Of a stretch of 64,000 bases of DNA, positions 10,147 through 63,787 are shown in pieces; position 1 is the stretch's first letter, and every line of letters begins with the position of its first letter. The DNA is taken from IMG/VR virus record IMGVR_UViG_3300046543_000266, positions 1 through 64,000 of that record. One strand, 5' to 3'. Under the pieces are notes generated by a model that was given only the letters and a program-made list of their open reading frames with translations, was not told the DNA's origin and searched no databases. The position numbers and the translations under genes are program-made.

Positions 10147-10449
10147 GTGGCAAAAGAGCATCTAGCACTTTACTCTAATGACTGTAAGCGATGCCGACAT
10201 CTGGACCCGTCCGAGGCCAGAGCCTTTGCGAAGTGTCACTACAGCAAGGGTAACAAGCATTGTCCAGCGCAAGATCTGGTCATTGTAGTCGTAGGCCAAG
10301 CGTACCGTTGGGCGAATCTGGTGATTGCTGCCCGCGAGAAACGTGACGCCGCGTCTGAAGCTCGCATCCTGGCGCAGGTGGCGAAGAAACCTGCATCGTT
10401 CCAAGAACGCTTTTATTCAGCAATCGAAAATCCGGCGGACATCCGATGA
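10147..10449 (+). CDS. Cys-rich hypothetical protein
   Basis: CKRCRH..C..HC pattern, 100 aa. Confidence 0.65.
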   Translation: MAKEHLALYSNDCKRCRHLDPSEARAFAKCHYSKGNKHCPAQDLVIVVVGQAYRWANLVIAAREKRDAASEARILAQVAKKPASFQERFYSAIENPADIR

Positions 10450-11192
10450 ACAAGGCGATACCAGCGGCTACGAAACCCGCATCTAACTCTCCCACCGTAA
10501 TCCGCTTGACGAAGATCAAGCAGTGGTGGCTCCCAGTCGACGCCGAGTCCTACTTGGCTTTGCGCGAGGCCGGTGTGCCACTCGTCCGCTTTCATGTGGA
10601 CTTCCTCCCAGCGCTATCCCTCATTACGAAGAAGCATCGCATCCGTGCGAAGGAAGTATCCTTCAAGGATGAAATCCTGACGCCGTTCCTCAATCTGGTC
10701 GGCACCACCTGGAACAAGAAGCAACACTGCCGGGCAACCATCGCCGCGCGGTCCATGAAGTTCGAGACCCTGAAGCCCGAGGTCTACACGAAAGCGAAAG
10801 AGAGCATCACGAAGCTCACCGACATCCTCGAGAAGTTCTTTGTTCGGTGGGGCTTCAAATACCAGTTCGAGTACAGCGAGTCGCGCGGTAAGTGTAAATT
10901 GAATGTGGAGTACTACTTCGACAGCACCAAGATGCCGGTCATTCCTCTGGAGACCCCGGTCACTGATCTGCCGAAGGTCCAACTGAAGATCGGCTTTACG
11001 CGCATCACGATGACGTTCGGCGACCGCTATGTGGATACGCTGATCGAAGTCAGTCAGGGTGGCAAGTTCACCCCGTTGCACTCAACGCGTTGCACGTACT
11101 CGCAGATATCCTCAGTCAAACCTATGATCGCGGCACTCATGCAGGTGCCCGATCATGACATTCACAACTTCGACAACTCGGCCACCCCATGA
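10446..11192 (+). CDS. hypothetical protein
   Basis: 248 aa ORF coupled (ATGA) to neighbours. Confidence 0.75.
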   Translation: MNKAIPAATKPASNSPTVIRLTKIKQWWLPVDAESYLALREAGVPLVRFHVDFLPALSLITKKHRIRAKEVSFKDEILTPFLNLVGTTWNKKQHCRATIAARSMKFETLKPEVYTKAKESITKLTDILEKFFVRWGFKYQFEYSESRGKCKLNVEYYFDSTKMPVIPLETPVTDLPKVQLKIGFTRITMTFGDRYVDTLIEVSQGGKFTPLHSTRCTYSQISSVKPMIAALMQVPDHDIHNFDNSATP

Positions 11193-13870
11193 TTATGGCT
11201 CTCGCCAAAAAGAAAGTCGCCGCTCCGACAAAGAAGGCGGCTTCGTATTCGAGCAAGGACATCACAACCTTGCGCTTCCCGGACAACGTCCGCTCGAACC
11301 CTTCGATGTATCTTGGGTCGGTGGACGCCGCTGGTGTGTGGCTCACGGCCCGGGAATTGCTGGACAACGCGCTGGATGAGCATCTGGCGCACCGTAACGA
11401 CGCAGTCATGCTGCACGTCGATAAGGACGGCTCCTATTGGGTGCTGGATCGTGGTCACGGCGTGCCGCAGGGTGTGAAGAAGTTCAGCGTGCACGTCAAC
11501 GGCAAGGACATCGAGACGAAGATGCCCACGATGCAAGCCGTCTTCGGTGAACTGCATACGTCGGGCAAGTATCGCTCGGATGCATACGCAACCTCGGTTG
11601 GTACGCACGGCATCGGCGCCAAGGGCACCAACGCAACCTCGGAGTTCTTCGAGGTCTTCACGTTCTACGAAGGCCAGTGGTTCACCATCGGCTTCAAGAA
11701 GGGCAAGCTGGTCAAGCACGTCGCGAAGTGCAGCGCCCCGAAGGGTCCCGACGGCAAGACTGTTACCAAGGGCACGGTCATCCACTTCAAGCCGGATCCC
11801 ACGATCTTCACCGTCAAGTCCTTCCCACCCTCGATGGTGATGGAATGGGCCGACGTGATGTCGCATCTGAATCCCGGCTTCGCAATCGTCGTATCCAGCC
11901 CCAAGGGCAAGAAGCAGTTCCTGTCGAAAATCGGCCCGGCCGGTTACGTCCAGCAGCGCATCGAGAAGTTGAAGACCGAAGCTGAACGCCTGATGTTCGA
12001 GTACAAGTCGGATCTGGCGGACGTCGTGGTGGCCTTCTCGAACTATGACGGCTGCGACGTGCGCGGTTTCACGAACGGCCTGAACAATGCTCAGGGCGGC
12101 AAACATCTGGACGCTGTGACCGGCGCACTGTACGCGGGCCTCAAGCCCTACATCAAAACCAAGCGCGTGGAAGGGAAGCCGGTTCCGGTGTTCCGCGAGG
12201 CTGACTTCAAGGAAGGCTTGGTTGGTCTTGTCAACGCCAAGCTCCACAAGGCCGAGTTCAGTTCGCAGGACAAGGCACGGCTGACTGATGCTCGTATGGG
12301 TGCGGCGTTCGAGAAAGAGCTCACGCTGGCAACCATCAAGTTCTTCAAGGACAACAAGGCACTGGCACTGCGTCTGTGTGCGCGGGCCACAAAGCTCAAC
12401 GAACTGAAGACCAAGTTCACGTTGTCGAAGAAGGCTGCGTCCACGCTCAACGCTATGAAGCGCAACGGTCTGCCCGCCAAGTACGCTGGATTCGACAGCA
12501 AGACGAAGACCGAAGACCGCGAACTGTTCATCGTCGAAGGGGATTCGGCAGGTGGTACGGTCAAGAAGGGTCGCTTCCCGTATCAGGCAGTGCTGCCCCT
12601 CAAGGGCAAGATCATGAACGCGTTGAAGGATGGCAAGGGCAAGACGCTGGAGTCGGAGGAAATCCTGAACATCCTGGCGGCTATCGGCTTCGACGTCAAG
12701 GCAGTCGACCCGTATGCCAAGCTCACGGTCGGCAAGATTGTGTGTCTGGCTGACCCGGATCCGGACGGCCCCTTCATCGGCGACACCCGCATCAACTTCC
12801 GCTACAATACGCACGGCACGACGCAGTCGGCCAGCATCGAGTGCCTCGCCAAGATGGCAGCTGATGGTACGGAGTTCGTGGTTCCGGTGTGGAACGGCCA
12901 AACCGAAGTGTGGGCCAGCGCCAGCGCTCGCCTCGAACGCAACGTCGAGCAACTGGTTGCTCTCGAGATCGGCAAGACGAAGTACAAGGTCAGCGTCGAT
13001 CACAAGTGGCTGTGTGTTAAAACCGATGCGCTGCGCGGCCGCGACGTGGGCGAACATGCAGACAACCTCGTGTTCGTCAGGGCGGCTGATCTGAAGGTAG
13101 GCGACCGGGTGTTCATGCCCGCAGCTAACAACACGCGGGACAAGTCTAGCTGCGACTACGCGACGAAGCTCGGGTTCGCCCCAGTCTCGAAGATGCGCAT
13201 CCAGCAGTTGGACCAGCCGGTTCCGGTGTACTGTCTGAGCGTGCCGAAGTATCACCACTTCATGCTGCCTTCGGGTATCGTGTCGAGCAACTGCCACATC
13301 AACTCGTTGCTGCTCACGCTGTTCTACCGCTATCTGCCTGAGCTGTTCAGCCGGGGCATGGTGTTCGTTGCCAACAGCCCGGAGTTCTACAGCATCCACA
13401 AGAATCAGCTGGTGACCGGCGAGTCGCTGTCGGCAATGGGCAAGAACCTGAAGCGCATCAAGGCACCGGCCAACACGCCGATCCATCACATCAAGGGTTG
13501 GGGAGAAATCGATGCTCCGCTGATGCGCATCTTGGCAATGGACCCGGCCACGCGGAAGCTCATCAAGATTGGCGCAATCGAGCACGACGACAAGGTTGAC
13601 TTCGAGCGGCTCATGAACGACGACGTTGCCTATCGCCGTGACATGTTGGGCTTGCCGTCCAATGCCGTCGGCGGTGACGTGGAGGAGGAAGGCACTCCGA
13701 AGTCCAAGGCCGCACGTAAAGTACCTGTGAACAAAGCGGTCGTCGCAGCCAAGAAAATTGCGACAGCCAACCGGAAGATCGTTCACCGTCGCGATGAAAT
13801 CGAAGCCAAGCGCATCGAGAAGCGACGTGGCCTCCGTCCGGTGGGCAAGACGTTGCGCAAAGCCGCATAA
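11189..13870 (+). CDS. gyrB: type IIA topoisomerase ATPase/Toprim subunit (GyrB/ParE-like), intein-containing
   Basis: ELLDNALDE, DRGHG, GTHGIGAKGTNA (GHKL); IVEGDSAGG, PLKGKIMN, DPDPDG (Toprim). Confidence 0.95.
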   Translation: MIMALAKKKVAAPTKKAASYSSKDITTLRFPDNVRSNPSMYLGSVDAAGVWLTARELLDNALDEHLAHRNDAVMLHVDKDGSYWVLDRGHGVPQGVKKFSVHVNGKDIETKMPTMQAVFGELHTSGKYRSDAYATSVGTHGIGAKGTNATSEFFEVFTFYEGQWFTIGFKKGKLVKHVAKCSAPKGPDGKTVTKGTVIHFKPDPTIFTVKSFPPSMVMEWADVMSHLNPGFAIVVSSPKGKKQFLSKIGPAGYVQQRIEKLKTEAERLMFEYKSDLADVVVAFSNYDGCDVRGFTNGLNNAQGGKHLDAVTGALYAGLKPYIKTKRVEGKPVPVFREADFKEGLVGLVNAKLHKAEFSSQDKARLTDARMGAAFEKELTLATIKFFKDNKALALRLCARATKLNELKTKFTLSKKAASTLNAMKRNGLPAKYAGFDSKTKTEDRELFIVEGDSAGGTVKKGRFPYQAVLPLKGKIMNALKDGKGKTLESEEILNILAAIGFDVKAVDPYAKLTVGKIVCLADPDPDGPFIGDTRINFRYNTHGTTQSASIECLAKMAADGTEFVVPVWNGQTEVWASASARLERNVEQLVALEIGKTKYKVSVDHKWLCVKTDALRGRDVGEHADNLVFVRAADLKVGDRVFMPAANNTRDKSSCDYATKLGFAPVSKMRIQQLDQPVPVYCLSVPKYHHFMLPSGIVSSNCHINSLLLTLFYRYLPELFSRGMVFVANSPEFYSIHKNQLVTGESLSAMGKNLKRIKAPANTPIHHIKGWGEIDAPLMRILAMDPATRKLIKIGAIEHDDKVDFERLMNDDVAYRRDMLGLPSNAVGGDVEEEGTPKSKAARKVPVNKAVVAAKKIATANRKIVHRRDEIEAKRIEKRRGLRPVGKTLRKAA
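12770..13291 (+). mobile_element. 174 aa mini-intein, class-3-like, Pro at position 1
   Basis: Inserted between DPDPDG and CHINSLLL; PFIGDT..SVDHKWL..VYCLSV..HHF..GIVSSN|C; no LAGLIDADG motifs. Confidence 0.85.
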
Positions 13871-13879
13871 GGAATCGAC

Positions 13880-15463
13880 ATGGTAATCAAAAGACGAGTA
13901 GCGAAGCCCGAAGCCGACGATATGGACTTCGACAAACCCGCACCGCGCACACGGGCTCCGGCCCGTCGTGGCAAAGCGCCGGTCAAGCGGGTTCTGAAGG
14001 GTACTGAGGACAAGCACGTCGATAACGAAAGCATCCGTAGCTTCGGCAAGCGCAACATGACCACGTATGCTGTGGCGGTCAACCTCGATCGCAGCGTGCC
14101 TGACATGTACGACGGGTGGAAGCCTGTGCATCGCCGCATCATCTGGGCGGCTTCCACTCAGGCTCGCGACCTAACCAAGACGGCGCGGGTCGTGGGCGAT
14201 ACGCTTGGCAAGTATCACCCCCACGGTGACCGCAGCGTGGCCGACGCCATCGAGACGATGGTCAACATGCCTACTGCTCCGCTTTTGGGCAAGGGCAATT
14301 GGGGATCGATGATCGACAGCGCGGCAGCCATGCGATACACCAACATGAAGCTGTCGGCGTATGGCCTCACGTTCCTGAACCCGCACTACATCCACTCGGA
14401 AGTCACGTCGTTCGTACCCAACTACGACGACAAGGACGTGGAGCCGGTCACGCTTCCGGCGCAGTTGCCGAACGTGCTGATCAACGGCTCCGAGGGTATC
14501 GGCGTTGGCATTACCACTGGCTTGCCGTCGTTCACGCCTGAGTCGATGATCAGTGTGCTGGAGAGCATGCTCAAGGGTGAGAAGCTGAAGGCCGTCGACT
14601 TCGCGAAGCGCCTGAAGTTCGCTCACAAGTGGGGCGGGCAGATCGTCCAGTCGAAGGAGAACCGCTTATCAATGATGGGCATCTTCAACGGCAGCGTCGG
14701 CACTGTACAGTTCGAGTCGGCCATCGAAGTGGATCGTGACCGCAAGAGCATGACCATCGGCGACTGGCCTCCAGGCACTAACCTCGAGAAGTTCGTGGCG
14801 CGTGTCCGGGCCATGCCTGAATGTCAGCGCTGCTATAACAGCGAAGGCGTCACCAACTTCACGATCGAGTGCAAGCCCGCCTACAACTATGTGCAGTTCG
14901 ACAAGTTCGTTGAGAAGGTTCAGGCGGCGACTCGGCAGAAGCGCAACTACAAGATCAACGTAACGCAGCGTGTCGCCAACGATAACGACGGCGTCATTAG
15001 CTTCGAGACCAAGTTCTTGGCGCTGTCGGTGCCTGAGCTGATCTTGCAGTGGTTGCGTATGCGCCTCCAGTTGGAACTGAAAAGTCTGACGTTCCGGATC
15101 AAGAAGCAGGAAGCAGCCATCGCCTACTCCGAGCTCCTGATCTACGCGTGCGACAAACTGGATCTGATCTTCAAGGCGATTCGTAGCAGCGACCCGAAAG
15201 CCGCGATGGTAAAGCTGCTGAAGATCACCGAGGAGCAAGCCAAGCAAATCCTGGAGTTGCGCTTGTCACAACTCACGCGCATGGATCAAAGCGCGATGAA
15301 GGAAAAGCTGGCCGAGCAACGCAGTCATCACAAGCAACTGCTCGTGTGGCAGAAGAAGCCTCGCAGCAAGGTGCTTCTCGATCTCGAAGATGTCCGAGCC
15401 GCAATCGACAAGGACCGGAAGTTCGAAAACACCAAGGAAGAGCAGTCGCTTACGGTGGTGTAA
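13880..15463 (+). CDS. gyrA: type IIA topoisomerase breakage-reunion subunit (GyrA/ParC-like), no CTD pinwheel
   Basis: DGWKPVHRRI, KTARVVGDTLGKYHPHGD, AAMRYT (Tyr 14336-14338); only 527 aa. Confidence 0.95.
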   Translation: MVIKRRVAKPEADDMDFDKPAPRTRAPARRGKAPVKRVLKGTEDKHVDNESIRSFGKRNMTTYAVAVNLDRSVPDMYDGWKPVHRRIIWAASTQARDLTKTARVVGDTLGKYHPHGDRSVADAIETMVNMPTAPLLGKGNWGSMIDSAAAMRYTNMKLSAYGLTFLNPHYIHSEVTSFVPNYDDKDVEPVTLPAQLPNVLINGSEGIGVGITTGLPSFTPESMISVLESMLKGEKLKAVDFAKRLKFAHKWGGQIVQSKENRLSMMGIFNGSVGTVQFESAIEVDRDRKSMTIGDWPPGTNLEKFVARVRAMPECQRCYNSEGVTNFTIECKPAYNYVQFDKFVEKVQAATRQKRNYKINVTQRVANDNDGVISFETKFLALSVPELILQWLRMRLQLELKSLTFRIKKQEAAIAYSELLIYACDKLDLIFKAIRSSDPKAAMVKLLKITEEQAKQILELRLSQLTRMDQSAMKEKLAEQRSHHKQLLVWQKKPRSKVLLDLEDVRAAIDKDRKFENTKEEQSLTVV

Positions 15464-23809: not shown

Positions 23810-23934
23810 AGTAGTCGTTCATCTTGTTTCGCTTGTAGCACTTTGCAGTATAGGCCAATCTAAAATCACAAACGGGACACACCGACCCTTCCCAAACAAT
23901 CATCGGTGTGTCCCTTAAAACAAAGGTAATAAAA

Positions 23935-25692
23935 ATGAAAAAGACGACCATCGCAATCGCAATCCTGTCCTCGTTCGCAGCTCCGGCATTCGCAACGCAG
24001 TACGTGGCCTACGACACGGTTCCGGGCAGTCACGGCCAGTCGGAAGTGGACTACGGCAACGTCACGATGCAGGGTACGAACGGCACGAAGATCCACAACG
24101 TCGCGGCGGGTACGTCAGGCACGGATGCAGTCAATGTCAACCAGCTGAACAGCGCAATCGCTACGGTCAAGACCCAGAAGGGCGATACCGGCGCGACGGG
24201 TGCCACAGGTGCTCAAGGGGTCGCGGGTAAGGACGGCAAGAACGGCATCGATGGTAAGAACGGCATCGATGGTAAGAACGGCATCGATGGAGCAGCGGGT
24301 GCGACCGGCGCTCAAGGCGTCGCAGGTAAGGATGGTGCGAAGGGCGACACTGGCGCACAGGGTATCCAGGGTGTGAAAGGCGATAAGGGTGAGAAGGGCA
24401 ACACTGGCGCTTCTGTTGCTGGCGTGTCTATCAACGGCACGACTGTGACGACAACGCTCGACAACGGTTCGCAGGTGAACGGCACTATCACGGGTCTGGC
24501 TACGACGGAGCAGTTGAACCAGACGAACGTCAACGCCAGCGCTCTGGGTTCGAAGGTGGACCAAGCTACCACGACGGCGAATCAAGCCAAGTCCATCGCA
24601 CAAGGGGCAGACGCCAAGTCGAACACGGCAATCGGCATCGCCGCCGGAGCAGCTATCACCGCGACCGGTGCAGCCATCGTCAGCGGCATCGCCTACGAGA
24701 AGGCTGACAATGCTCAGCAAGTCGCTGGTCAGGCCAACGCCACGTCCAACCAAGCGAAGAACATCGCTCAAGGTGCGGCGTACCAAGCCAGTCACGCAGA
24801 CCAAGTCGCGGCTGAAGCCAACACGACGGCAGGTAAGGCAACCGTCACAGCACAGGCAGCAGATGCGAAGTCGGACATCGCACTGGCAACCGGCGTGAAG
24901 AACAGCGGTGACATCAACAAGCTGAACGCGGGCTTGGCGACTACCAACTCGCATGTCGCGCAGAACACGGCAGACATAGCGGCCAATCAGCAAGCCATCC
25001 GCTCGGAAGCTGGCCGTGCTCAAGACGCTGAGTGGAAGCTGGGATCAGCGATCACGTCGGAAACGTCGCGCGCAACGGCTGCCGAGCAGGGCATCCAGTC
25101 GCAAGTGACGGGCAACACGAAGAGCATCAACAATCTCAACGCACGCCAAGCCAACACCGAAGCGTGGATCGGAAATGCGAACGCGGGAGCCATCGGTCAA
25201 GGCTCGCAAGTGAAGGCGAACAACGCAGTTGCACTCGGTGCTGGCTCCGTGGCAGATCGTGACAATACCGTGTCCGTAGGCGCTGCTGGTCAGGAGCGTC
25301 AGGTCACCAACGTCGCAGCCGGTACGCAAGCAACCGACGCGGTGAACGTGTCGCAGCTGAACAGCTACATGCGTCAGACAGCAAAGGCGGTGGACAACTC
25401 GAATGCCTACACGGATCAGCGAGTCAACGCTCTGCAGTCGTCGTTCGATAGCTTCAAGAAGGATACCTACGGCGGCATCGCAACGGCGCTGGCAATTGCA
25501 GGACTGCCGCAGCCGACGGCTCCGGGTCGTTCGATGGTGTCGGTGGCGGGTTCCACGTATCACGGGGCAACCGGTCTGGCCGCTGGCTACTCGCAGGTAA
25601 CGCAAGACGAGCGTTGGGTGATGAAGGCGTCGGTTACCACGAGCAACCGTGGCGACTTCGGTGCTGTGCTCGGCGCTGGTCGTCAATTCTGA
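23935..25692 (+). CDS. trimeric autotransporter adhesin (YadA-like) with collagen-like G-X-Y segment
   Basis: Signal peptide MKKTTIAIAILSSFAAPAFA; VAAG..TDAVNVxQL necks; GXY repeats; AVALGAGSVA head; anchor GIATALA..GAGRQF. Confidence 0.92.
   Translation: MKKTTIAIAILSSFAAPAFATQYVAYDTVPGSHGQSEVDYGNVTMQGTNGTKIHNVAAGTSGTDAVNVNQLNSAIATVKTQKGDTGATGATGAQGVAGKDGKNGIDGKNGIDGKNGIDGAAGATGAQGVAGKDGAKGDTGAQGIQGVKGDKGEKGNTGASVAGVSINGTTVTTTLDNGSQVNGTITGLATTEQLNQTNVNASALGSKVDQATTTANQAKSIAQGADAKSNTAIGIAAGAAITATGAAIVSGIAYEKADNAQQVAGQANATSNQAKNIAQGAAYQASHADQVAAEANTTAGKATVTAQAADAKSDIALATGVKNSGDINKLNAGLATTNSHVAQNTADIAANQQAIRSEAGRAQDAEWKLGSAITSETSRATAAEQGIQSQVTGNTKSINNLNARQANTEAWIGNANAGAIGQGSQVKANNAVALGAGSVADRDNTVSVGAAGQERQVTNVAAGTQATDAVNVSQLNSYMRQTAKAVDNSNAYTDQRVNALQSSFDSFKKDTYGGIATALAIAGLPQPTAPGRSMVSVAGSTYHGATGLAAGYSQVTQDERWVMKASVTTSNRGDFGAVLGAGRQF
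24235..24288 (+). repeat. 3 x 18 bp tandem repeat (GKNGID)
   Basis: GG(C/T)AAGAACGGCATCGAT x3. Confidence 0.9.
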
Positions 25693-41331: not shown

Positions 41332-43263
41332 ATGAATACCAATCAAGATCTCGTATCGTTGAAGCGACAGTACAAACGGGCGGTGGTCGCGTACTACAAC
41401 GCAGACAAGCCCATCATGACAGACGCCGCCTTCGACAAGCTGGAGGACCAGATCCGCAAGGCTGATCCGTCGTGGAAGGAACTGGCTAACACTGGCGTCA
41501 AGGTTGCGGACAAGAAGACCGAGGCACCGTTGGTCGAGTTCATGCCTAGTCTCAACAAGATGTACCCGGAAGCGGTCAGCAAGTTCTACGCTCGCCCCGC
41601 GTCGGCCAAGGTCGGCGCATGGCTATGGATGGACAAGCTGGATGGGACCAGCCTCCAGCTAGTGTACAAGAACGGTCGCCCCTTCAAGCTTATCACGCGT
41701 GGCGACGGCACTCTTGGTGGTGACATCAGCTTCTTCCTGCCTACCTTGGTGAAGCTCAAGCGTATCCCGGCCCAGATCCCCACCAACGGACAGGTGGTGT
41801 TCCGCATCGAGGGTCTGATGTCAGTCAAGACGTTCGCGAAGAAGTGGTCGCGAGGCGTCCGGGGTAAGCTCGGGTTCGACAACATCCGCAACATGGTGAA
41901 CGGCCTCTTCAACAAGAAGGACATGCATCCGGCGCTGGTTGATGTGGACTTGGTGGTGTTGGGAGTGTACGACATGACCATGTACAAAGGTCTGCAGACG
42001 GCAGCCCAATGGGGATTCAACGTCGTGCATTATCAAGTAGTGAAGGGTCACAAGGATTCAGAGAAGGGTCACAAGGACGCAGAAGCGCACGGCAAAGCGT
42101 TGGAGGATCGTCGTGCCGCCAGCATTTACGAGATGGATGGTCTGGTGATTGCTCCGATGATGTTCGAGTTGTCCTATCCCAACGCGGACAAGCCCAAGGC
42201 ACTGATCGCCTTCAAGTTCAACGACGAGGAAAATGCGCAGCAGGTCGTGGTAGAGGACATCATCTGGCAAAAGACGCGGCTCAAGCGCTGGATACCGAAG
42301 ATCAACATCAAGCCCACCAAGATGGACGGCGTCATGGTTTCGAATGCGGCCGCCCACAACGCTGAGTGGATGAAGGAGAAGGGTATCGGGCCGGGAGCTA
42401 TCGTCAAGGTTCTGCGCAGTGGTGGCGTCATCCCGAAGATTGTGGGCGTCGTCAAGAAGGCTGCATTCAAGGAACCGCCTGGACCGTATGAAGTTCAGGG
42501 CGTCCACTTCGTCATGGCCGAGCACGACAAGGCAACCGAAGTACGTGGCATCCACTTCTTCATGACCACGCTTGGCGTCGAGCTCCTGGCCTCGAAGACC
42601 ATCAGCTTGCTGTATGACCACGGCTTCACGACGCCTGAATCCTATATCAAGCTGGCCCACGCATCGGACAAGATCATCAAGCATACGCTGGCTCCCGCAG
42701 AGTTGGGTCCAAAGCAAAGCGCCAAGATCATCGCTGAGCTGAAGCGCGTGCTGTGCAACACGGTGTCGCTGCGTCTGCTGATGGTGGCGTCGGGTGCCTT
42801 CGAGAAGGGTGGCATGGGTAAGCGCAAGCTGGAGCAGCTGGAGGACGCTGGTATCGCAATGGCCCGCTTGTGCAACATGAAGAGCCCTGAGCTTATCAGC
42901 ACGGTGGAAAACATCAAGGGCTTCAGCAGCAAGACTGCCACGATTCTGAATGACGGCGTGAAGGTGTTCCGTGAATGGTATCGTCCGCTGAAGGGCGTGC
43001 TCACCGTGGACGGCGCGTTACCTAAGAAGGCGAAGCCAGTCGCTGGTGGCAAGCTGTCTGGTATCAACGTGGCCTGGACTTCGTACCGGGACAAGGATCA
43101 GGAAGCGAAGGTTGTGGCCCTCGGCGGTGCCGTGGTTCCGTACGGTGCCAAGATGACGGTCCTGCTGTACAAGGAAGGAGCCAAGTTCGCAGCCAAGATC
43201 GAGAAGGCTGGCGACAAGGCCATGACGTGGGAAACGTTCACCAACAATTATGGAGTCAAGTAA
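41332..43263 (+). CDS. ligA: NAD-dependent DNA ligase (BRCT present, no obvious C4 Zn finger)
   Basis: YYN..PIMTDAAFDKL, MPSLNK, KLDG, TRGDG..G.DI, EMDGLV, AFKF, RSGGVIPKI. Confidence 0.93.
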   Translation: MNTNQDLVSLKRQYKRAVVAYYNADKPIMTDAAFDKLEDQIRKADPSWKELANTGVKVADKKTEAPLVEFMPSLNKMYPEAVSKFYARPASAKVGAWLWMDKLDGTSLQLVYKNGRPFKLITRGDGTLGGDISFFLPTLVKLKRIPAQIPTNGQVVFRIEGLMSVKTFAKKWSRGVRGKLGFDNIRNMVNGLFNKKDMHPALVDVDLVVLGVYDMTMYKGLQTAAQWGFNVVHYQVVKGHKDSEKGHKDAEAHGKALEDRRAASIYEMDGLVIAPMMFELSYPNADKPKALIAFKFNDEENAQQVVVEDIIWQKTRLKRWIPKINIKPTKMDGVMVSNAAAHNAEWMKEKGIGPGAIVKVLRSGGVIPKIVGVVKKAAFKEPPGPYEVQGVHFVMAEHDKATEVRGIHFFMTTLGVELLASKTISLLYDHGFTTPESYIKLAHASDKIIKHTLAPAELGPKQSAKIIAELKRVLCNTVSLRLLMVASGAFEKGGMGKRKLEQLEDAGIAMARLCNMKSPELISTVENIKGFSSKTATILNDGVKVFREWYRPLKGVLTVDGALPKKAKPVAGGKLSGINVAWTSYRDKDQEAKVVALGGAVVPYGAKMTVLLYKEGAKFAAKIEKAGDKAMTWETFTNNYGVK

Positions 43264-60241: not shown

Positions 60242-61945
60242 GTGGACCAAACTAAAATCACCGCTTCACAGCTAGTCAATCTTCTCGAGATACTATACGT
60301 TCTCGTCATCGATTACGTTGAGAACGGACCCGAGCGCAAGCCGGACGCAGAAACCGCTGAAGAGCTCAAGCATCTGGGCAAACCTGCTGTCGCTCAGTGG
60401 GGCAAGGATCTGCCGGCTCTGCGAGACAGCATCAACGCGGCATTGGCTGGTCGCAGCAAAGCCGAGCAACTCGCGCTTCTCGGTGAAGAAGTGAAGGGTG
60501 CCTTCCAGAACTTCCGCGCCAACGAACGGTTCACCAGTCAGGAAATCGAACTGCTCAAGGCACTCGGCGCCTATCTGCGCACTGACTCCGAGATCGCGCT
60601 GCAGAAGATCAAGAAGTTCGCGGGCGTGATGAACAATCCGTACATCAGCAAGCGCATGGCTCCGGAAGTCGGCACACAGAAGAAGTCGTCGAATGCGTTG
60701 CGCCAACTCATCAAGAAGATGGTTGGTCGCGACGATACAGCTCTTACCTTGGACGAAGCGAAGATCGCCAAGGAGATGCATCCGGATCTGTATAAGCAAT
60801 ACATGGCGTATCGCAAACAGCACCGGGAAGTGTGGCAGAACGCGATGATCTCGTACATCCGTAACAGCGGACACAGCACGGTTCCGTACGAAGAGCTCCT
60901 GCAATATCTGCTGGCGAACGGCATCGACCACATGCTCCCGCTGGGATTCACTGGTCAGGTGGACGATCAAGGCAAGCTGTACACCAACGACGGTCATCTG
61001 ATCGACGGCGTGCCGCAAGCAACCAACTTCCCGAGCGTGGAAATGAACGCGCATTACGGTCAGCCGGGTGCCGAGCATTACGTGTTCCAAGCCATCCGCT
61101 CGAATGGCGGCCCCGGTCCGTACTTCTACACGTCTGACTTCAAGAAGGCCGCTAGTCGCGCCAAGTTTGAGAAGGTCGCCGATCTGGCACCGAAGCTCAA
61201 CTCAATGCAGAAGAAGTGGTTCGCCAACGTCAAGAAGTTCGATCCCGAGAACGTGCGCTGCGTCTGCGCTACCGTGCTGGAAATCCTGTACGAGTTCAGC
61301 GCCCGCGTCGGTTCCAAGGGTAACGCTGCGGCTGGACAATCCACGTTCGGTGTGTCCACGCTTCTGGTCCGTCACGTCAGCGTCGATCAAGGAGGCAATG
61401 TGATCCTGCGCTATCGCGGTAAGGACGCAGTGCCTACGATGCACAAGCTGATGAAGAACGATCCGCAGCAACGATTCGTGATCGCCAATCTGATGCAGCT
61501 GATGAACGGCAAGCAACCGAAGGATCGGCTGTTCACGGTGTCCAGTCCAACAGGACGACTCAAACCAGTTGGCGGTGCCGCGGTCAACGCGTACTTCCGT
61601 AGTCTGGGTGCGCCCGAAGGTGTGACCGTCCACAAGCTGCGTACCTTCCGTGGCACTGCGCTGTTCCGTGAGCTGATGGACAAGCTCTTCGAGAGTGGTA
61701 AGCTTCCGAAGGACGAACGCGCTGCAACCCTCATGTTCAACAAGATGGCGATGGCCGTCGGCAAAGCGCTCAATCACGTGCGCCGTGGTGCGAACGGGAC
61801 GTCAGTCACCGGGACAACTGCGCTTGCCAACTACATCGACCCCTCCATCCAAATCACCTTCTGGCGTCAGTTGGGCTTCCGACCGCCGAAGTCCCTCGAA
61901 CGCTTCGATGTCGGTGGTGGCGCTGGTTCCACTGACGAAGAATAA
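60242..61945 (+). CDS. DNA topoisomerase IB with long N-terminal extension
   Basis: Pentad: SARVGSKGN (R), FGVSTL..HV, YRGKD (K), HKLRTF (R), LNH (H), NYIDP (Tyr 61832-61834). Confidence 0.85.
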   Translation: MDQTKITASQLVNLLEILYVLVIDYVENGPERKPDAETAEELKHLGKPAVAQWGKDLPALRDSINAALAGRSKAEQLALLGEEVKGAFQNFRANERFTSQEIELLKALGAYLRTDSEIALQKIKKFAGVMNNPYISKRMAPEVGTQKKSSNALRQLIKKMVGRDDTALTLDEAKIAKEMHPDLYKQYMAYRKQHREVWQNAMISYIRNSGHSTVPYEELLQYLLANGIDHMLPLGFTGQVDDQGKLYTNDGHLIDGVPQATNFPSVEMNAHYGQPGAEHYVFQAIRSNGGPGPYFYTSDFKKAASRAKFEKVADLAPKLNSMQKKWFANVKKFDPENVRCVCATVLEILYEFSARVGSKGNAAAGQSTFGVSTLLVRHVSVDQGGNVILRYRGKDAVPTMHKLMKNDPQQRFVIANLMQLMNGKQPKDRLFTVSSPTGRLKPVGGAAVNAYFRSLGAPEGVTVHKLRTFRGTALFRELMDKLFESGKLPKDERAATLMFNKMAMAVGKALNHVRRGANGTSVTGTTALANYIDPSIQITFWRQLGFRPPKSLERFDVGGGAGSTDEE

Positions 61946-62518: not shown

Positions 62519-63787
62519 ATGACAATCGCACTCAATGCGGCCGCACGTTTAACCGCGGCGATGGCCGACGAGAAGCAATCGTTGGTGTTCCTGCAGTCGC
62601 TCGGGTTCAATGGCCTTCGCTACAAGAACGCGGAAGAGGATCGCATCCGCTTCCACTACACGACGTATAACGAGCAGTTCCTCATCAAGCACTTTGGCAA
62701 GCCCGAAAGCATCAAGATCGGCAAAGTGTGGAAGTTCGGTACGGAAGGCGCTATCCTCGTGCGCACCACTATGAGTCTGGTGGTGCTCCGCAATGCCAAA
62801 GGCAACGCCAAGCGTCGGGCACCTGCTCCAGTCGCACCCGTTGCACCTATCGAGACGCATGTTCCGGCACCGGCACCGGCTCCCGCGCCAGAGCCGAAGC
62901 TTCCTCCGGCACAGGATCCGAATGTTCCAGGGGCTAAGGACAACGACGACGCGAATGTCCCGGTCACGCATTTGCCTGACAATCTGGTCAAGTTCTACAG
63001 CCGAGCCAAGGCACTGAAGGACGACCGGATATACCGTAAGCGCTTCATGGCTCTGCTGTGGCATTACCTGAACACCAACAAGTTCGGCGGTCAGTTGAAG
63101 GAACCACGCTTCAACTTGCTCAAGGATCAAGATGCGTATCGGATGCGACTGCGTGGTCGTTGGTGGCCGGGTAAGCGCGTGCTGGATATCGCGCCTCGTC
63201 TGTACAACGCACAGCAGAACTTCTTCGTCGAGATCTTCCTCCACGAGATGTGCCATCAGGCAGTGTCCGAAATCGACCACGCGGACTTCGACCCATCCGA
63301 GCGTTACCATAAGGGACACGGTCCGTACTGGCAAGACTGGATGCGCAAGGTCGGCTTGAACCCATTGCGGTTCGATCCGAATGACAACTCGACCTACATG
63401 ACCGAGGACGAGAAAGAAGAACATAAAGAACGCGTTGAACAGCGTAAAGAAGCATCGGAAGAACTGCGTGATCGGGGCATCACCCGTCTGATGTATTACG
63501 AGGGTATCACACCGGCAACCGCAGTGTGGCAGGGGAAGATCTTGGTTGGTCTGGCAGTATGCCCGACCGCCAAGAACGGTAAGGCTATCGCATTCCTCGA
63601 CATCAACGAGTTGCCCGGCAATTCGTTCAAGCTCGTAGCAGGAACCGCACTGTACAAGTTTTCGGGTACAGAAGAGCAGAAGGCCACGTTGTTGAGTGCC
63701 CCGTATCTGAGTAAGGCGAAGCGCATTGCTGATTACTACGGCGATAAGGCTCTTCTTCGTCAGCTCAAGCGGACGCGTCGTATCTAA
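62519..63787 (+). CDS. SprT-like zinc metalloprotease domain protein
   Basis: IFLHEMCHQ..HKGHGPYWQDWMRKVG; Pro-rich linker. Confidence 0.85.
   Translation: MTIALNAAARLTAAMADEKQSLVFLQSLGFNGLRYKNAEEDRIRFHYTTYNEQFLIKHFGKPESIKIGKVWKFGTEGAILVRTTMSLVVLRNAKGNAKRRAPAPVAPVAPIETHVPAPAPAPAPEPKLPPAQDPNVPGAKDNDDANVPVTHLPDNLVKFYSRAKALKDDRIYRKRFMALLWHYLNTNKFGGQLKEPRFNLLKDQDAYRMRLRGRWWPGKRVLDIAPRLYNAQQNFFVEIFLHEMCHQAVSEIDHADFDPSERYHKGHGPYWQDWMRKVGLNPLRFDPNDNSTYMTEDEKEEHKERVEQRKEASEELRDRGITRLMYYEGITPATAVWQGKILVGLAVCPTAKNGKAIAFLDINELPGNSFKLVAGTALYKFSGTEEQKATLLSAPYLSKAKRIADYYGDKALLRQLKRTRRI

What the first reader, a model, noticed from the sequence alone, without database searches (positions are those of the whole stretch)
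12770..13291. Pro1 class-3-type mini-intein in the GyrB Toprim motif with non-canonical block G
Seen in sequence: 174 aa inserted at DPDPDG|CHI. It starts with Pro rather than Cys/Ser, has Trp in block B (SVDHKW, 13007-13009) and Cys in block F (VYCLSV, 13232-13234), and ends GIVSSN before Cys+1. Established: class 3 inteins lack an N-terminal nucleophile, use the block-F Cys and carry a W-C-T signature; the mycobacteriophage Bethlehem DnaB intein is the Pro1 example. Here the signature reads W-C-S, the penultimate His is Ser, and there is no homing endonuclease. It splits the Mg-binding DxD region, so splicing would gate topoisomerase activity, possibly in a redox-sensitive way (inference).
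Basis: partly seen in the sequence, partly recalled or inferred. Interest (0 to 1): 0.7.

Follow-up and report, generated by a model that had tools for sequence, protein, structure and literature searches.

The report
Self-splicing mini-intein in phage GyrB
A 174-residue self-excising protein element (an intein) that starts with proline instead of the usual cysteine sits in the magnesium-binding motif of a jumbo phage's DNA topoisomerase subunit. It belongs to a large family of such elements that I could not find described, and that probably starts splicing from an internal cysteine.

Summary
Window 12770-13291 encodes 174 in-frame residues between DPDPDG and CHIN of a phage GyrB-like gene (11189-13870).

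It is a real intein:
- The AlphaFold model has pLDDT 97.5, and its 50 listed PDB matches are all inteins, intein-like BIL domains or Hedgehog.
- The C-terminal splicing motif passes the NCBIfam cut-off.
- More than 60 jumbo-phage GyrBs, including phiRSL1 and BcepSaruman, carry it at the same bond.
- Insert-free alleles nested among the carriers read DPDPDG|xHIN exactly.
- The +1 residue is Cys in all but one carrier and varies freely in empty alleles.
- Intein dN/dS is 0.17-0.28.

Pro1, His B:10, Cys F:4 and Asn G:7 are invariant in 63 sequences. This fits class 3 splicing started by the block F cysteine, but no experiment shows it.

The signature differs from WCT. B:12 is Trp here but Phe in 60% of relatives, G:5 is Ser, the penultimate His is absent, and +1 is Cys.

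By sequence and fold the family is closer to class 1 inteins than to known class 3 ones. Cys1 siblings that also carry Cys F:4 occupy the same site.

Redox gating is untested. I rate it a new variant of a known kind, of moderate interest.

The parts
11189..13870 (+). gyrB-like gene, the host of the intein. The precursor is 893 aa (98.3 kDa). The predicted spliced product is 719 aa (79.0 kDa).
   Evidence: ORF. Pfam DNA_gyraseB, Toprim and DNA_gyraseB_C, and NCBIfam GyrB models. The extein is 63% identical to phiRSL1 GyrB. Masses.
11189..12769 (+). N-extein (527 aa), ending in the Toprim acidic motif DPDPDG (12752-12769).
   Evidence: dN/dS is 0.05-0.07 against close relatives.
12770..13291 (+). 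Mini-intein of 174 aa (19.3 kDa) with no endonuclease domain.
   Evidence: The same insert is present in phiRSL1, BcepSaruman and more than 60 metagenomic GyrBs.
12770..12793 (+). Block A, PFIGDTRI. Pro1 replaces the usual Cys/Ser nucleophile. Pro1 and Thr6 are invariant in 63 homologues.
12974..13015 (+). Block B, KTKYKVSVDHKWLC: Ser75 (B:7), His78 (B:10, 13001-13003, invariant) and Trp80 (B:12, 13007-13009). B:12 is Trp in 24, Phe in 38 and Leu in 1 of 63.
   Evidence: Alignment to Pho RadA block B. Residue counts, coordinates.
13223..13270 (+). Block F, PVYCLSVPKYHHFMLP. Cys155 (F:4, 13232-13234) is the proposed initiating nucleophile and is invariant in 63/63 homologues and in all 26 inteins sampled at this site.
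   Evidence: It aligns with the F:4 Asp of Pho RadA..
13271..13294 (+). Block G plus the +1 residue, SGIVSSN|C: Ser172 (G:5), Ser173 (G:6, where His is usual), Asn174 (G:7, 13289-13291, invariant) and Cys+1 (13292-13294).
   Evidence: TIGR01443 above its cut-off. Counts. Cys+1 is present in all carriers but one, and the position is variable in empty alleles.
13292..13867 (+). C-extein (192 aa), starting CHINSLLLTLFYRY, the helix that follows DxDxDG in GyrB Toprim domains.
   Evidence: dN/dS is 0.10-0.14.
13880..15463 (+). gyrA-like partner subunit (527 aa), 10 nt downstream.
   Evidence: Pfam DNA_topoisoIV, 3.7e-72. The gene order is the same in phiRSL1, BcepSaruman, L005 and L007.
10446..11192 (+). 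Conserved upstream gene of unknown function (248 aa), overlapping the gyrB start by 4 nt. It serves as a synteny marker.
   Evidence: No Pfam hit. Homologues lie upstream of gyrB or of free-standing intein-derived ORFs in L013 and L015.

Best explanation
The insert is a functional protein-splicing mini-intein in the GyrB subunit of a 217.6-kb phiRSL1-like jumbo phage. The gene is translated as a 98-kDa precursor in which the intein separates the Toprim DxDxDG metal-binding motif from the helix that follows it. The precursor is therefore expected to be inactive (inference). Splicing should release a 19-kDa intein and a 79-kDa GyrB reading ...DPDPDG-CHIN....

The most likely route is the class 3 one:
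1. With no nucleophile at position 1 (Pro), Cys155 at block F position 4, helped by His78 (B:10), attacks the Gly-1/Pro1 peptide bond and forms a thioester branch.
2. The N-extein is passed to Cys+1.
3. Asn174 cyclises and releases the intein.
4. An S-to-N shift makes the peptide bond.

Shown here: the fold, the homology to inteins, the exact junction, the conservation pattern, purifying selection, and the existence of precise intein-free alleles. Inferred: that splicing happens, and that Cys155 rather than Cys+1 starts it.

My confidence that it is a splicing-competent intein is about 0.9. My confidence that the route is class 3 is about 0.65-0.7.
For: Fold and homology.

The same insert sits at the same bond in phiRSL1, BcepSaruman and more than 60 metagenomic GyrBs, down to 21-30% identity.

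Invariant in 63/63: Pro1, Thr6, His B:10, Cys F:4, Phe164 and Asn G:7.

The +1 residue is Cys in 65 of 66 Pro1 carriers (one has Ser) and in both Cys1 carriers. In 59 insert-free alleles the same position is H, W, S, C, R, L, A, Y, K or G.

Insert-free alleles are nested inside carrier clades with the exact DPDPDG|xHIN junction. The ones closest to carriers still have Cys: P0076 is sister to P0036 (support 99), and P0084 sits inside a clade with support 100. The enzyme therefore works without the insert, and the insert is removable at exactly these bonds.

Intein dN/dS is 0.17-0.28 in close pairs, against 0.05-0.15 for the exteins.

A natural control: three free-standing homologues that are no longer embedded in GyrB have all lost His B:10, Cys F:4 and the terminal Asn together.

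The block positions match the Pro1 Bethlehem class 3 intein (P1, S B:7, H B:10, W B:12, C F:4). In the Bvi IcmO class 3 intein, a natural Cys+1 could not replace Cys F:4 (PMC5222942).
Against: There is no biochemical or proteomic evidence of splicing for any member.

The class 3 signature is incomplete. Thr G:5 is Ser, Trp B:12 is Phe in 60% of the family, and +1 is Cys rather than Ser/Thr.

The penultimate His, which usually assists Asn cyclisation, is absent in 62 of 63.

The family shows no significant sequence similarity to the Bethlehem class 3 intein (3-6 bits). It is closer to class 1 inteins by sequence and fold.

Cys F:4 is also kept in the Cys1 siblings at this site, so its conservation is not tied uniquely to the lack of an N-terminal nucleophile.

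I could not measure distances in the model because no coordinates are returned.
Confidence: 0.7

Rival explanations
1. It is a functional intein that splices by a class 2-like (KlbA-type) route. Cys+1 attacks the Gly-1/Pro1 peptide bond directly, and Cys155 serves only as a structural or assisting residue in place of the usual F:4 Asp.
For: Cys+1 is nearly universal in carriers, whereas typical class 3 inteins have Ser/Thr+1. The family is not related by sequence to known class 3 inteins. Cys F:4 is also present in the Cys1 siblings, which have their own N-terminal nucleophile.
Against: Cys F:4 is invariant in 63/63 Pro1 inteins. Class 2 inteins use Asp at F:4 and Ala at position 1 (PMC2807308). 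In the one studied class 3 intein with a natural Cys+1, Cys+1 could not start splicing. In the subfamily holding the Cys1 forms, the Cys1 members have HPF in block B and their Pro1 siblings have H(K/R)W. That is the covariation expected for class 3.
Confidence: 0.15
2. It is a domesticated HINT-fold insertion that no longer splices and stays in the mature GyrB as an extra domain.
For: No splicing has been shown. There is no penultimate His and no endonuclease. The insert is widespread and appears long-lived in this clade. E. coli GyrB tolerates a large insertion in its Toprim domain, though at another position (own knowledge).
Against: A permanent domain would not need Pro1, His B:10, Cys F:4, Asn G:7 and Cys+1 to be invariant. 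These residues decay together as soon as the domain is free-standing. The +1 position is free to vary only in empty alleles. The insertion separates DxDxDG from its helix in a catalytic motif.
Confidence: 0.05
3. The intein is kept as a conditional switch. Oxidation or metal binding at the Cys155/Cys+1 pair pauses splicing and so holds back phage topoisomerase activity under stress. This does not exclude the best explanation.
For: There is a precedent: the class 3 Msm DnaBi1 intein is reversibly blocked by H2O2 through a disulfide at its catalytic Cys F:4 (PMC6195587). Here two catalytic cysteines are conserved, and they should lie close together in the active site (inference from the HINT fold).
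Against: Nothing here tests it. No additional conserved cysteine exists: Cys25, Cys82 and Cys128 of the window's intein are variable. Empty alleles arise repeatedly inside carrier clades, so the switch is dispensable. The intein evolves 3-5 times faster than the exteins and is exchanged between alleles. That behaviour fits a tolerated parasite.
Confidence: 0.1
4. The excised HINT domain has a second job after splicing, for instance as a small partner of the topoisomerase. This would explain why it is retained without an endonuclease, and why catalytically dead copies persist as separate genes at the gyrB locus.
For: The free-standing ORFs P0047, P0058 and P0040 (172-180 aa) keep intact reading frames, with ends within a few residues of the intein ends. 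Two of them lie directly upstream of gyrB, and for one the gyrB is shown to be intein-free. Intein dN/dS is well below 1 outside the catalytic residues.
Against: Selection on the free-standing copies was not tested, so they may be decaying remnants. Purifying selection on a fold is expected for any intein in an essential gene. There is no known precedent.
Confidence: 0.1

Closest known systems
Mycobacteriophage Bethlehem 'DnaB' intein (MP-Be DnaB), the founding class 3 intein (PMC2807308)
   Same: Both are phage-encoded. Both start with Pro1, have Ser at B:7, His at B:10, Trp at B:12 and Cys at F:4, and end in Asn. Both are inserted in a catalytic motif of a nucleic-acid enzyme.
   Different: MP-Be is 341 aa with a LAGLIDADG-type endonuclease region, while this one is a 174-aa mini-intein. 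MP-Be ends THN|T, while this one ends SSN|C. There is no significant sequence similarity beyond block B (3-6 bits). The host protein differs: the Bethlehem intein lies in gp11 at L004:7680-8702, not in a topoisomerase.
[quoted passage not shown]
   Same: A mini-intein without an N-terminal nucleophile, with Cys F:4 plus Cys+1, so both branch points would be thioesters.
   Different: Bvi IcmO has the full WCT triplet and a penultimate His (per the paper's description of the class). It has a different host protein and comes from a bacterial plasmid. Its sequence was not compared here.
Mycobacterium smegmatis DnaBi1 class 3 mini-intein (PMC6195587; structure discussed)
   Same: A class 3-type mini-intein in an essential replication enzyme. 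It is the precedent for redox control through the catalytic Cys F:4. Asp at B:7, as in DnaBi1, occurs in 19 of 63 members of this family.
   Different: It has WCT, Ser+1 and a non-catalytic Cys48 as disulfide partner. No conserved equivalent of Cys48 exists here. Solved class 3 structures (6zgq, 6rix) rank only 39th and 50th among the fold matches.
Pyrococcus horikoshii RadA mini-intein (PDB 2lqm, 4e2t), a class 1 intein
   Same: It is the closest solved relative by sequence profile (E 9e-11) and by fold (E 3.6e-9, TM 0.66). Its size is similar (about 170 aa). Blocks B, F and G align residue for residue.
   Different: It has Cys1, Asp at F:4 and HN at the C-terminus, while this intein has Pro1, Cys at F:4 and SN.
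Cellular GyrB inteins, such as the cyanobacterial Ssp GyrB (own knowledge), and archaeal GyrB inteins (61 noted in PMC9348778)
   Same: They are inteins in the same host protein family.
   Different: From memory, those I know of are class 1 (Cys1). Whether any uses the DxDxDG|x site was not tested here.

Membership tests
Intein (HINT-fold protein-splicing element) | HINT fold | tested here: met
   The AlphaFold2 model has pLDDT 97.5. All 50 Foldseek PDB matches listed are inteins, intein-like BIL domains or Hedgehog.
Intein (HINT-fold protein-splicing element) | Splicing blocks A, B, F and G with His B:10, a C-terminal Asn, and Cys/Ser/Thr at +1 | tested here: met
   TIGR01443 is above its cut-off. 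The blocks align with Pho RadA. His78, Asn174 and Cys+1 are present and conserved.
Intein (HINT-fold protein-splicing element) | In-frame insertion at a conserved site of a host protein, with homologues that lack it and read through the exact junction | tested here: met
   59 insert-free alleles read DxDxDG|xHIN, and several are nested within carrier clades.
Intein (HINT-fold protein-splicing element) | Demonstrated excision and extein ligation | not testable with these tools
   This needs expression and western blot, or mass spectrometry.
Mini-intein | No homing endonuclease domain between blocks B and F | tested here: met
   The intein is 174 aa with no endonuclease Pfam hit, and the model is a single HINT domain. 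Relatives at the same site of 418-455 aa carry HNH_3.
Class 1 intein | Cys, Ser or Thr at intein position 1 | tested here: not met
   Pro1 in the window and in 63/63 family members.
Class 3 intein | No N-terminal nucleophile required (non-Cys/Ser/Thr at position 1) | tested here: met
   Pro1, as in MP-Be DnaB.
Class 3 intein | Cys at block F position 4 | tested here: met
   Cys155 aligns with the F:4 Asp of Pho RadA and is invariant in 63/63.
Class 3 intein | Trp at block B position 12 | tested here: inconclusive
   The window has Trp80. Across the family the position is Phe in 38, Trp in 24 and Leu in 1, so Trp is not required in this lineage.
Class 3 intein | Thr at block G position 5 | tested here: not met
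   Ser172 in the window. The family has Ser in 61, Thr in 1 and Cys in 1. Ser keeps the hydroxyl, and the literature reports that mutating Thr G:5 can have little effect.
Class 3 intein | Ser or Thr at +1 (typical, not absolute; Bvi IcmO is the exception) | tested here: not met
   Cys+1 in the window and in 65 of 66 Pro1 carriers. One carrier (P0140) has Ser+1.
Class 3 intein | Groups with known class 3 inteins by sequence or phylogeny (the criterion used by Tori and Perler) | tested here: not met
   The family profile scores 3-6 bits against MP-Be. No class 3 chain appears at E<=1 in the PDB sequence search. Class 3 structures rank 39th and 50th by fold. No full phylogeny with an InBase set was possible.
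Class 3 intein | Absolute requirement for Cys F:4 and formation of a block F branched thioester intermediate | not testable with these tools
   This needs mutagenesis and thiolysis assays.
Class 2 (KlbA-type) intein | Ala1, with Asp at F:4 and direct attack by Cys+1 | tested here: not met
   Pro1 and Cys at F:4. Cys+1 is present. The mechanism itself cannot be tested here.

The most novel reading that the evidence does not exclude
This GyrB-site family may be a second, independent origin of splicing initiated by the block F cysteine. On this reading it arose from class 1 ancestors inside phage topoisomerase genes, not from the helicase/terminase class 3 lineage. Transitional forms would still be alive: Cys1 inteins that already carry Cys F:4 sit in one well-supported subfamily with Pro1 inteins at the very same bond, with and without HNH endonucleases. 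The family also does without Trp B:12, Thr G:5 and the penultimate His. If so, it offers a natural mutational path between intein classes. Engineering attempts failed to find such a path, and that failure led others to propose a separate origin for class 3 (PMC7664689). A further possibility is that the HINT domain has been put to new use as a free-standing gene beside gyrB.
Probability: 0.35. Interest if true: 0.7.

Novelty: new variant of a known kind. Interest (0 to 1): 0.55.

Why it matters
Class 3 inteins have so far been described almost only in helicase-type proteins and phage terminases, defined by the Trp-Cys-Thr triplet and, with one exception, Ser/Thr at +1. This finding differs in several ways:
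- It places a Pro1, Cys F:4 intein in a new host and site, the Toprim DxDxDG motif of a type IIA topoisomerase.
- The family has more than 60 members.
- The family shows which signature residues are dispensable (Trp B:12, Thr G:5, His G:6) and which are not (Pro1, His B:10, Cys F:4, Asn G:7, Cys+1).

Cys1 siblings at the same bond that keep Cys F:4 make the disputed question of how class 3 arose directly testable with natural sequences.

In practice, a compact 174-aa cysteine-initiated mini-intein with Gly at -1 and Cys at +1, and many natural variants, could be useful for protein engineering.

For annotation, phiRSL1-like and BcepSaruman-like GyrB genes are currently listed without any mention of an intein.

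For phage biology, an essential replication enzyme depends on a post-translational step. The element moves between alleles without an endonuclease of its own.

Tried and rejected
1. Pfam alone was not decisive. PF14890 matches only the C-terminal half and is below its gathering score. Family profiles and structure were needed.
2. hhalign of the family alignment against the full-length Bethlehem intein gave only a spurious 17-column match, because the endonuclease domain breaks the alignment. An HMM search against the Bethlehem intein with its middle removed aligned only block B, at 3-6 bits. I therefore rejected 'close relative of the Bethlehem intein'.
3. I first looked for the Bethlehem intein in the annotated DnaB-like gene gp62 and found nothing. 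It lies in gp11.
4. Literature searches for a GyrB class 3 intein, for inteins in phiRSL1 or BcepSaruman, and for jumbo-phage topoisomerase inteins found no description. This covers only the held library, and InBase could not be consulted.
5. I searched the phage's own 217.6-kb genome for other copies or other inteins. This one is the only hit.
6. I considered and rejected an RNA-level element or a frameshift. The frame is open throughout and the product folds as HINT.
7. I considered the 989-aa antisense ORF 11162..14131. It has no support and is the usual long antisense frame of GC-rich coding DNA.
8. Read mapping, RNA family searches and complex prediction were not used, because none bears on protein splicing.
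9. Distances between Cys155, the scissile bond and Cys+1 could not be measured, because the structure tool returns no coordinates.
10. Whether cellular GyrB inteins use the same site was not tested.
Full report
**1. What is in the sequence**

The + strand ORF 11189..13870 encodes an 893-aa protein. It matches Pfam DNA_gyraseB, Toprim and DNA_gyraseB_C. It also matches NCBIfam GyrB/ParE models at up to 1e-102, well below their equivalog cut-offs, as expected for a divergent phage enzyme.

A GyrA-like gene follows at 13880..15463 (Pfam DNA_topoisoIV, 3.7e-72).

The window lies in a 217,605-base virus record with direct terminal repeats, rated complete. Its nearest named relatives are Ralstonia phage phiRSL1 (73% nucleotide identity over the N-terminal half of gyrB) and Burkholderia phages BcepSaruman and BcepSauron.

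Between DPDPDG (12752-12769) and CHINSLLL (13292 onwards) lie 174 in-frame codons, 12770-13291.

**2. It is an intein**

- The NCBIfam model for the intein C-terminal splicing region (TIGR01443) is exceeded, with 20.5-22.9 bits against a cut-off of 15.6. Pfam Intein_splicing matches only the C-terminal half and is below threshold.
- A profile built from 63 homologous inserts (alignment A2) finds the Pyrococcus horikoshii RadA intein at E 9e-11, followed by TFIIB, DnaB, CDC21 and DnaE inteins and intein-like BIL domains.
- In that alignment the RadA block B Thr-x-x-His pairs with Ser75-x-x-His78. The RadA block F Asp (F:4) pairs with Cys155. The RadA His-Asn end pairs with Ser173-Asn174.
- An AlphaFold2 model made with A2 has mean pLDDT 97.5 and pTM 0.90 and is almost all beta strand.
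- All 50 Foldseek matches listed from the PDB are inteins, BIL domains or Hedgehog autoprocessing domains. The best is Pho RadA at E 3.6e-9 and TM 0.66.

**3. Comparative evidence that it splices**

The same insert, at the same peptide bond, is present in phiRSL1 and BcepSaruman GyrB at 50% and 47% identity. It is also present in more than 60 GyrB proteins from metagenomic contigs of up to 245 kb, down to 21-30% identity.

Residue counts across the 63 sequences:

| Position | Residues |
|---|---|
| Pro1, Thr6, His78 (B:10), Gly111, Cys155 (F:4), Phe164, Asn174 (G:7) | invariant |
| B:12 | Phe 38, Trp 24, Leu 1 |
| G:5 | Ser 61, Thr 1, Cys 1 |
| G:6 | Ser 40, Ala 12, Gly 6, Lys 4, His 1 |

Among the closest 120 GyrB homologues, 59 have no insert and read DxDxDG|xHIN without a gap.

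In 65 of 66 Pro1 carriers, and in both Cys1 carriers, the residue after the insert is Cys; one carrier has Ser. In the empty alleles that position is His 15, Trp 12, Ser 7, Cys 6, Arg 6, Leu 4, Ala 4, Tyr 3, Lys 1 and Gly 1. The enzyme therefore does not need Cys there. Only carriers of the insert do, which is what a +1 splicing nucleophile predicts.

On a tree of the exteins, empty alleles are nested inside carrier clades:
- P0076 (Cys) is sister to P0036, with support 99.
- P0084 (Cys) lies within a clade with support 100.
- P0086 and P0087 (Ser) are next to P0013.
- P0088 (Tyr) is next to P0038.

Precise gain or loss at these two bonds has thus happened repeatedly. The empty alleles closest to carriers tend to keep the Cys.

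For the three closest relatives (exteins 91-95% identical) I recovered the DNA and computed Nei-Gojobori rates. dN/dS is 0.05-0.07 for the N-extein, 0.10-0.14 for the C-extein and 0.17-0.28 for the intein. The intein evolves faster but is clearly under purifying selection.

**4. A natural control**

Three free-standing ORFs of 172-180 aa (P0040, P0047 and P0058) are homologous to the intein over its whole length (E 8.7e-31 to 2e-5). They start and stop within a few residues of the intein ends.

- P0047 lies directly upstream of an intein-free gyrB (junction DPDPDG|GHIA).
- P0058 lies directly upstream of a gyrB whose N-terminal 197 residues are on the contig before it ends, so the intein status of that gene is not visible.
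- P0040 has no gyrB within 4 kb.
- P0040 and P0047 each sit downstream of a homologue of the window's upstream gene 10446-11192.

All three have lost His B:10, Cys F:4 and the terminal Asn. The residues I propose as catalytic are therefore kept only while the domain is embedded in GyrB.

**5. Mechanism**

With Pro at position 1, the class 1 route (an N-to-S shift at residue 1) is impossible. Two known alternatives remain.

In class 3, defined on the Pro1 Bethlehem intein, Cys F:4 attacks the N-terminal junction, assisted by a variant block B containing Trp B:12. This gives a block F branched thioester, which is then passed to the +1 residue (PMC2807308; PMC5222942).

I located that intein in the Bethlehem genome at L004:7680-8702, inside gp11. 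Its blocks read PLALNTEV / SASHGW / VKCIGI / ILTHN|T. The window's read PFIGDTRI / SVDHKW / VYCLSV / IVSSN|C. The critical residues occupy the same block positions.

In class 2, Cys+1 attacks directly. Those inteins have Ala1 and Asp at F:4.

Three points make class 3 the more likely route:
- Cys F:4 is invariant in every Pro1 member.
- In one subfamily, block B reads H(K/R)W with Pro1 and HPF with Cys1.

I put class 3 at about 0.65-0.7, given that the insert splices at all. The missing penultimate His need not be a problem, since mutating it had minimal effect in the Bethlehem intein.

**6. Not a member of the known class 3 lineage by descent**

The family profile scores 45 bits against the class 1 Pho RadA intein. 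It scores only 3-6 bits, confined to block B, against the Bethlehem intein even with its endonuclease region removed. No solved class 3 intein appears at E<=1 in the sequence search. By fold they rank 39th (AceL NrdHF, 6zgq) and 50th (MchDnaB1, 6rix).

The same GyrB bond also hosts several other forms:
- Pro1 inteins of 322-455 aa; the two scanned (P0122, P0082) show weak HNH_3 matches
- Pro-Val forms ending CHN (P0143, P0153)
- Cys1 inteins: P0131 (418 aa, with HNH_3 above the Pfam cut-off) and P0141 (162 aa)

All 26 inteins sampled at this site have Cys at F:4. The two Cys1 inteins form a clade (100/97) nested in a 100/100 clade with Pro1 inteins P0046, P0082, P0122 and P0140. P0141 and P0046 are 36% identical at E 1e-32. 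A switch between Cys1 and Pro1 therefore occurred within one lineage that already had Cys F:4.

This bears on the argument of Beyer et al. (PMC7664689). Grafting WCT onto a class 1 intein did not give splicing, and they suggested that class 3 may have a separate origin.

**7. Mobility**

The window's intein has no endonuclease, yet the intein and extein histories disagree.

The exteins of the window, P0004, P0014 and P0031 form a clade with support 100 at 91-95% identity. Their inteins are only 49-68% identical. In the intein tree, P0014 and P0031 group with P0017 (100/98), whose extein belongs elsewhere.

An AU test rejects a single clade for the four inteins (p 0.0003). I named the group from the extein tree, after seeing the identity figures.

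Synonymous divergence is 2-3 times higher in the intein than in the flanks (window against L005: dS 1.16 against 0.55 and 0.37). Nucleotide identity falls from about 0.9 to 0.5-0.7 exactly at the N-terminal junction and recovers in the last 45 or so intein codons. This mosaic pattern points to exchange of intein segments by recombination between co-infecting phages.

In phiRSL1 a free-standing HNH endonuclease gene lies immediately upstream of gyrB. I did not test whether it is relevant.

**8. Function for the phage**

Because the insert separates DxDxDG from the following helix, the precursor should be inactive, and topoisomerase activity should depend on splicing (inference).

Redox control has a precedent in the class 3 Msm DnaBi1 intein. 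The conserved Cys155/Cys+1 pair could in principle form a disulfide. Nothing here tests this, the other cysteines are not conserved, and empty alleles arise repeatedly. I treat conditional regulation as an open possibility (about 0.1), not a finding.

**9. Novelty**

I found no description of an intein in phiRSL1-like or BcepSaruman-like GyrB, nor of a class 3-type intein in any gyrase, in the searchable literature. The GenBank annotations of both phages do not mention it. InBase could not be consulted.

The element is best called a new variant of a known kind. It is a Pro1, Cys F:4 mini-intein family with a (Trp/Phe)-Cys-Ser signature, no penultimate His and Cys+1. It sits in a new host protein and site, and it is probably not derived from the known class 3 lineage.

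**10. Verdict**

- The mechanism is unproven, and membership of class 3 by descent is not supported.
- Redox gating is unsupported.
- Interest is moderate (0.55). It would be higher for intein specialists if the family proves to be an independent route to block F-initiated splicing.

Noticed in passing
L013:1881-2414 (P0047), L011:1686-2204 (P0058), L015:4001-4543 (P0040); synteny marker at window 10446-11192: These are free-standing 172-180-aa ORFs homologous to the whole GyrB intein, with ends within a few residues of the intein ends. All have lost His B:10, Cys F:4 and the terminal Asn. P0047 lies directly upstream of an intein-free gyrB, and P0058 lies directly upstream of a gyrB that runs off the contig. 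P0040 and P0047 follow a homologue of the window's upstream gene. They could be remnants, or a HINT domain put to new use.
   Followed up: partly
P0131, P0141, P0122, P0082, P0140, P0143 and P0153 (relatives; same bond as window 12769|12770): The same DxDxDG|x bond hosts Cys1 inteins, long Pro1 inteins with HNH-like regions, and Pro-Val inteins ending CHN. All have Cys at F:4. The Cys1 forms are nested among Pro1 forms (100/100 support). P0140 has Ser+1.
   Followed up: yes
P0019 and P0073 (after the residue equivalent to window GyrB 138); P0010 (after the equivalent of residue 456): Some relatives carry a second, class 1 mini-intein (148-157 aa, Cys1, Thr+1) at one of two other GyrB sites: before the THG(I/V)G ATP-lid motif, or after EGDSAGG of the Toprim domain. 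This phage GyrB family therefore has at least three intein sites, all in catalytic motifs. The window has only the third.
   Followed up: partly
window 12770-13291 against L005, L007 and L008: Intein and extein histories disagree. The AU test rejects a common clade (p 0.0003). dS is 2-3 times higher in the intein. Nucleotide identity drops sharply at the N-terminal junction and recovers about 45 codons before the C-terminal junction. This suggests exchange of intein segments by recombination without an endonuclease.
   Followed up: yes
L001:1387-1929 and L001:4586-4939 (phiRSL1): phiRSL1 has a free-standing HNH endonuclease gene (ORF332) directly upstream of gyrB and a small ORF334 between gyrB and gyrA. 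The window has neither. A possible role of the HNH gene in moving the intein was not examined.
   Followed up: no
L004:7680-8702 (Mycobacterium phage Bethlehem): The reference 'MP-Be DnaB' class 3 intein lies in gp11 (903 aa, annotated as hypothetical and sitting just before the portal gene), not in the annotated DnaB-like helicase gp62. The historical name is misleading.
   Followed up: yes
window 60242-61945, 41332-43263, 23908-25692, 62519-63787: The phage also encodes four other notable proteins: a eukaryotic-type topoisomerase IB catalytic core (2.3e-23); an NAD-dependent DNA ligase; a protein with collagen repeats plus a YadA stalk and membrane anchor (a trimeric autotransporter adhesin architecture, unusual for a phage); and a SprT-like protein.
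   Followed up: no
window 11162-14131, minus strand: A 989-aa open frame lies antisense to the whole gyrB gene. It has no support as a gene and is the usual long antisense frame of GC-rich coding DNA.
   Followed up: no
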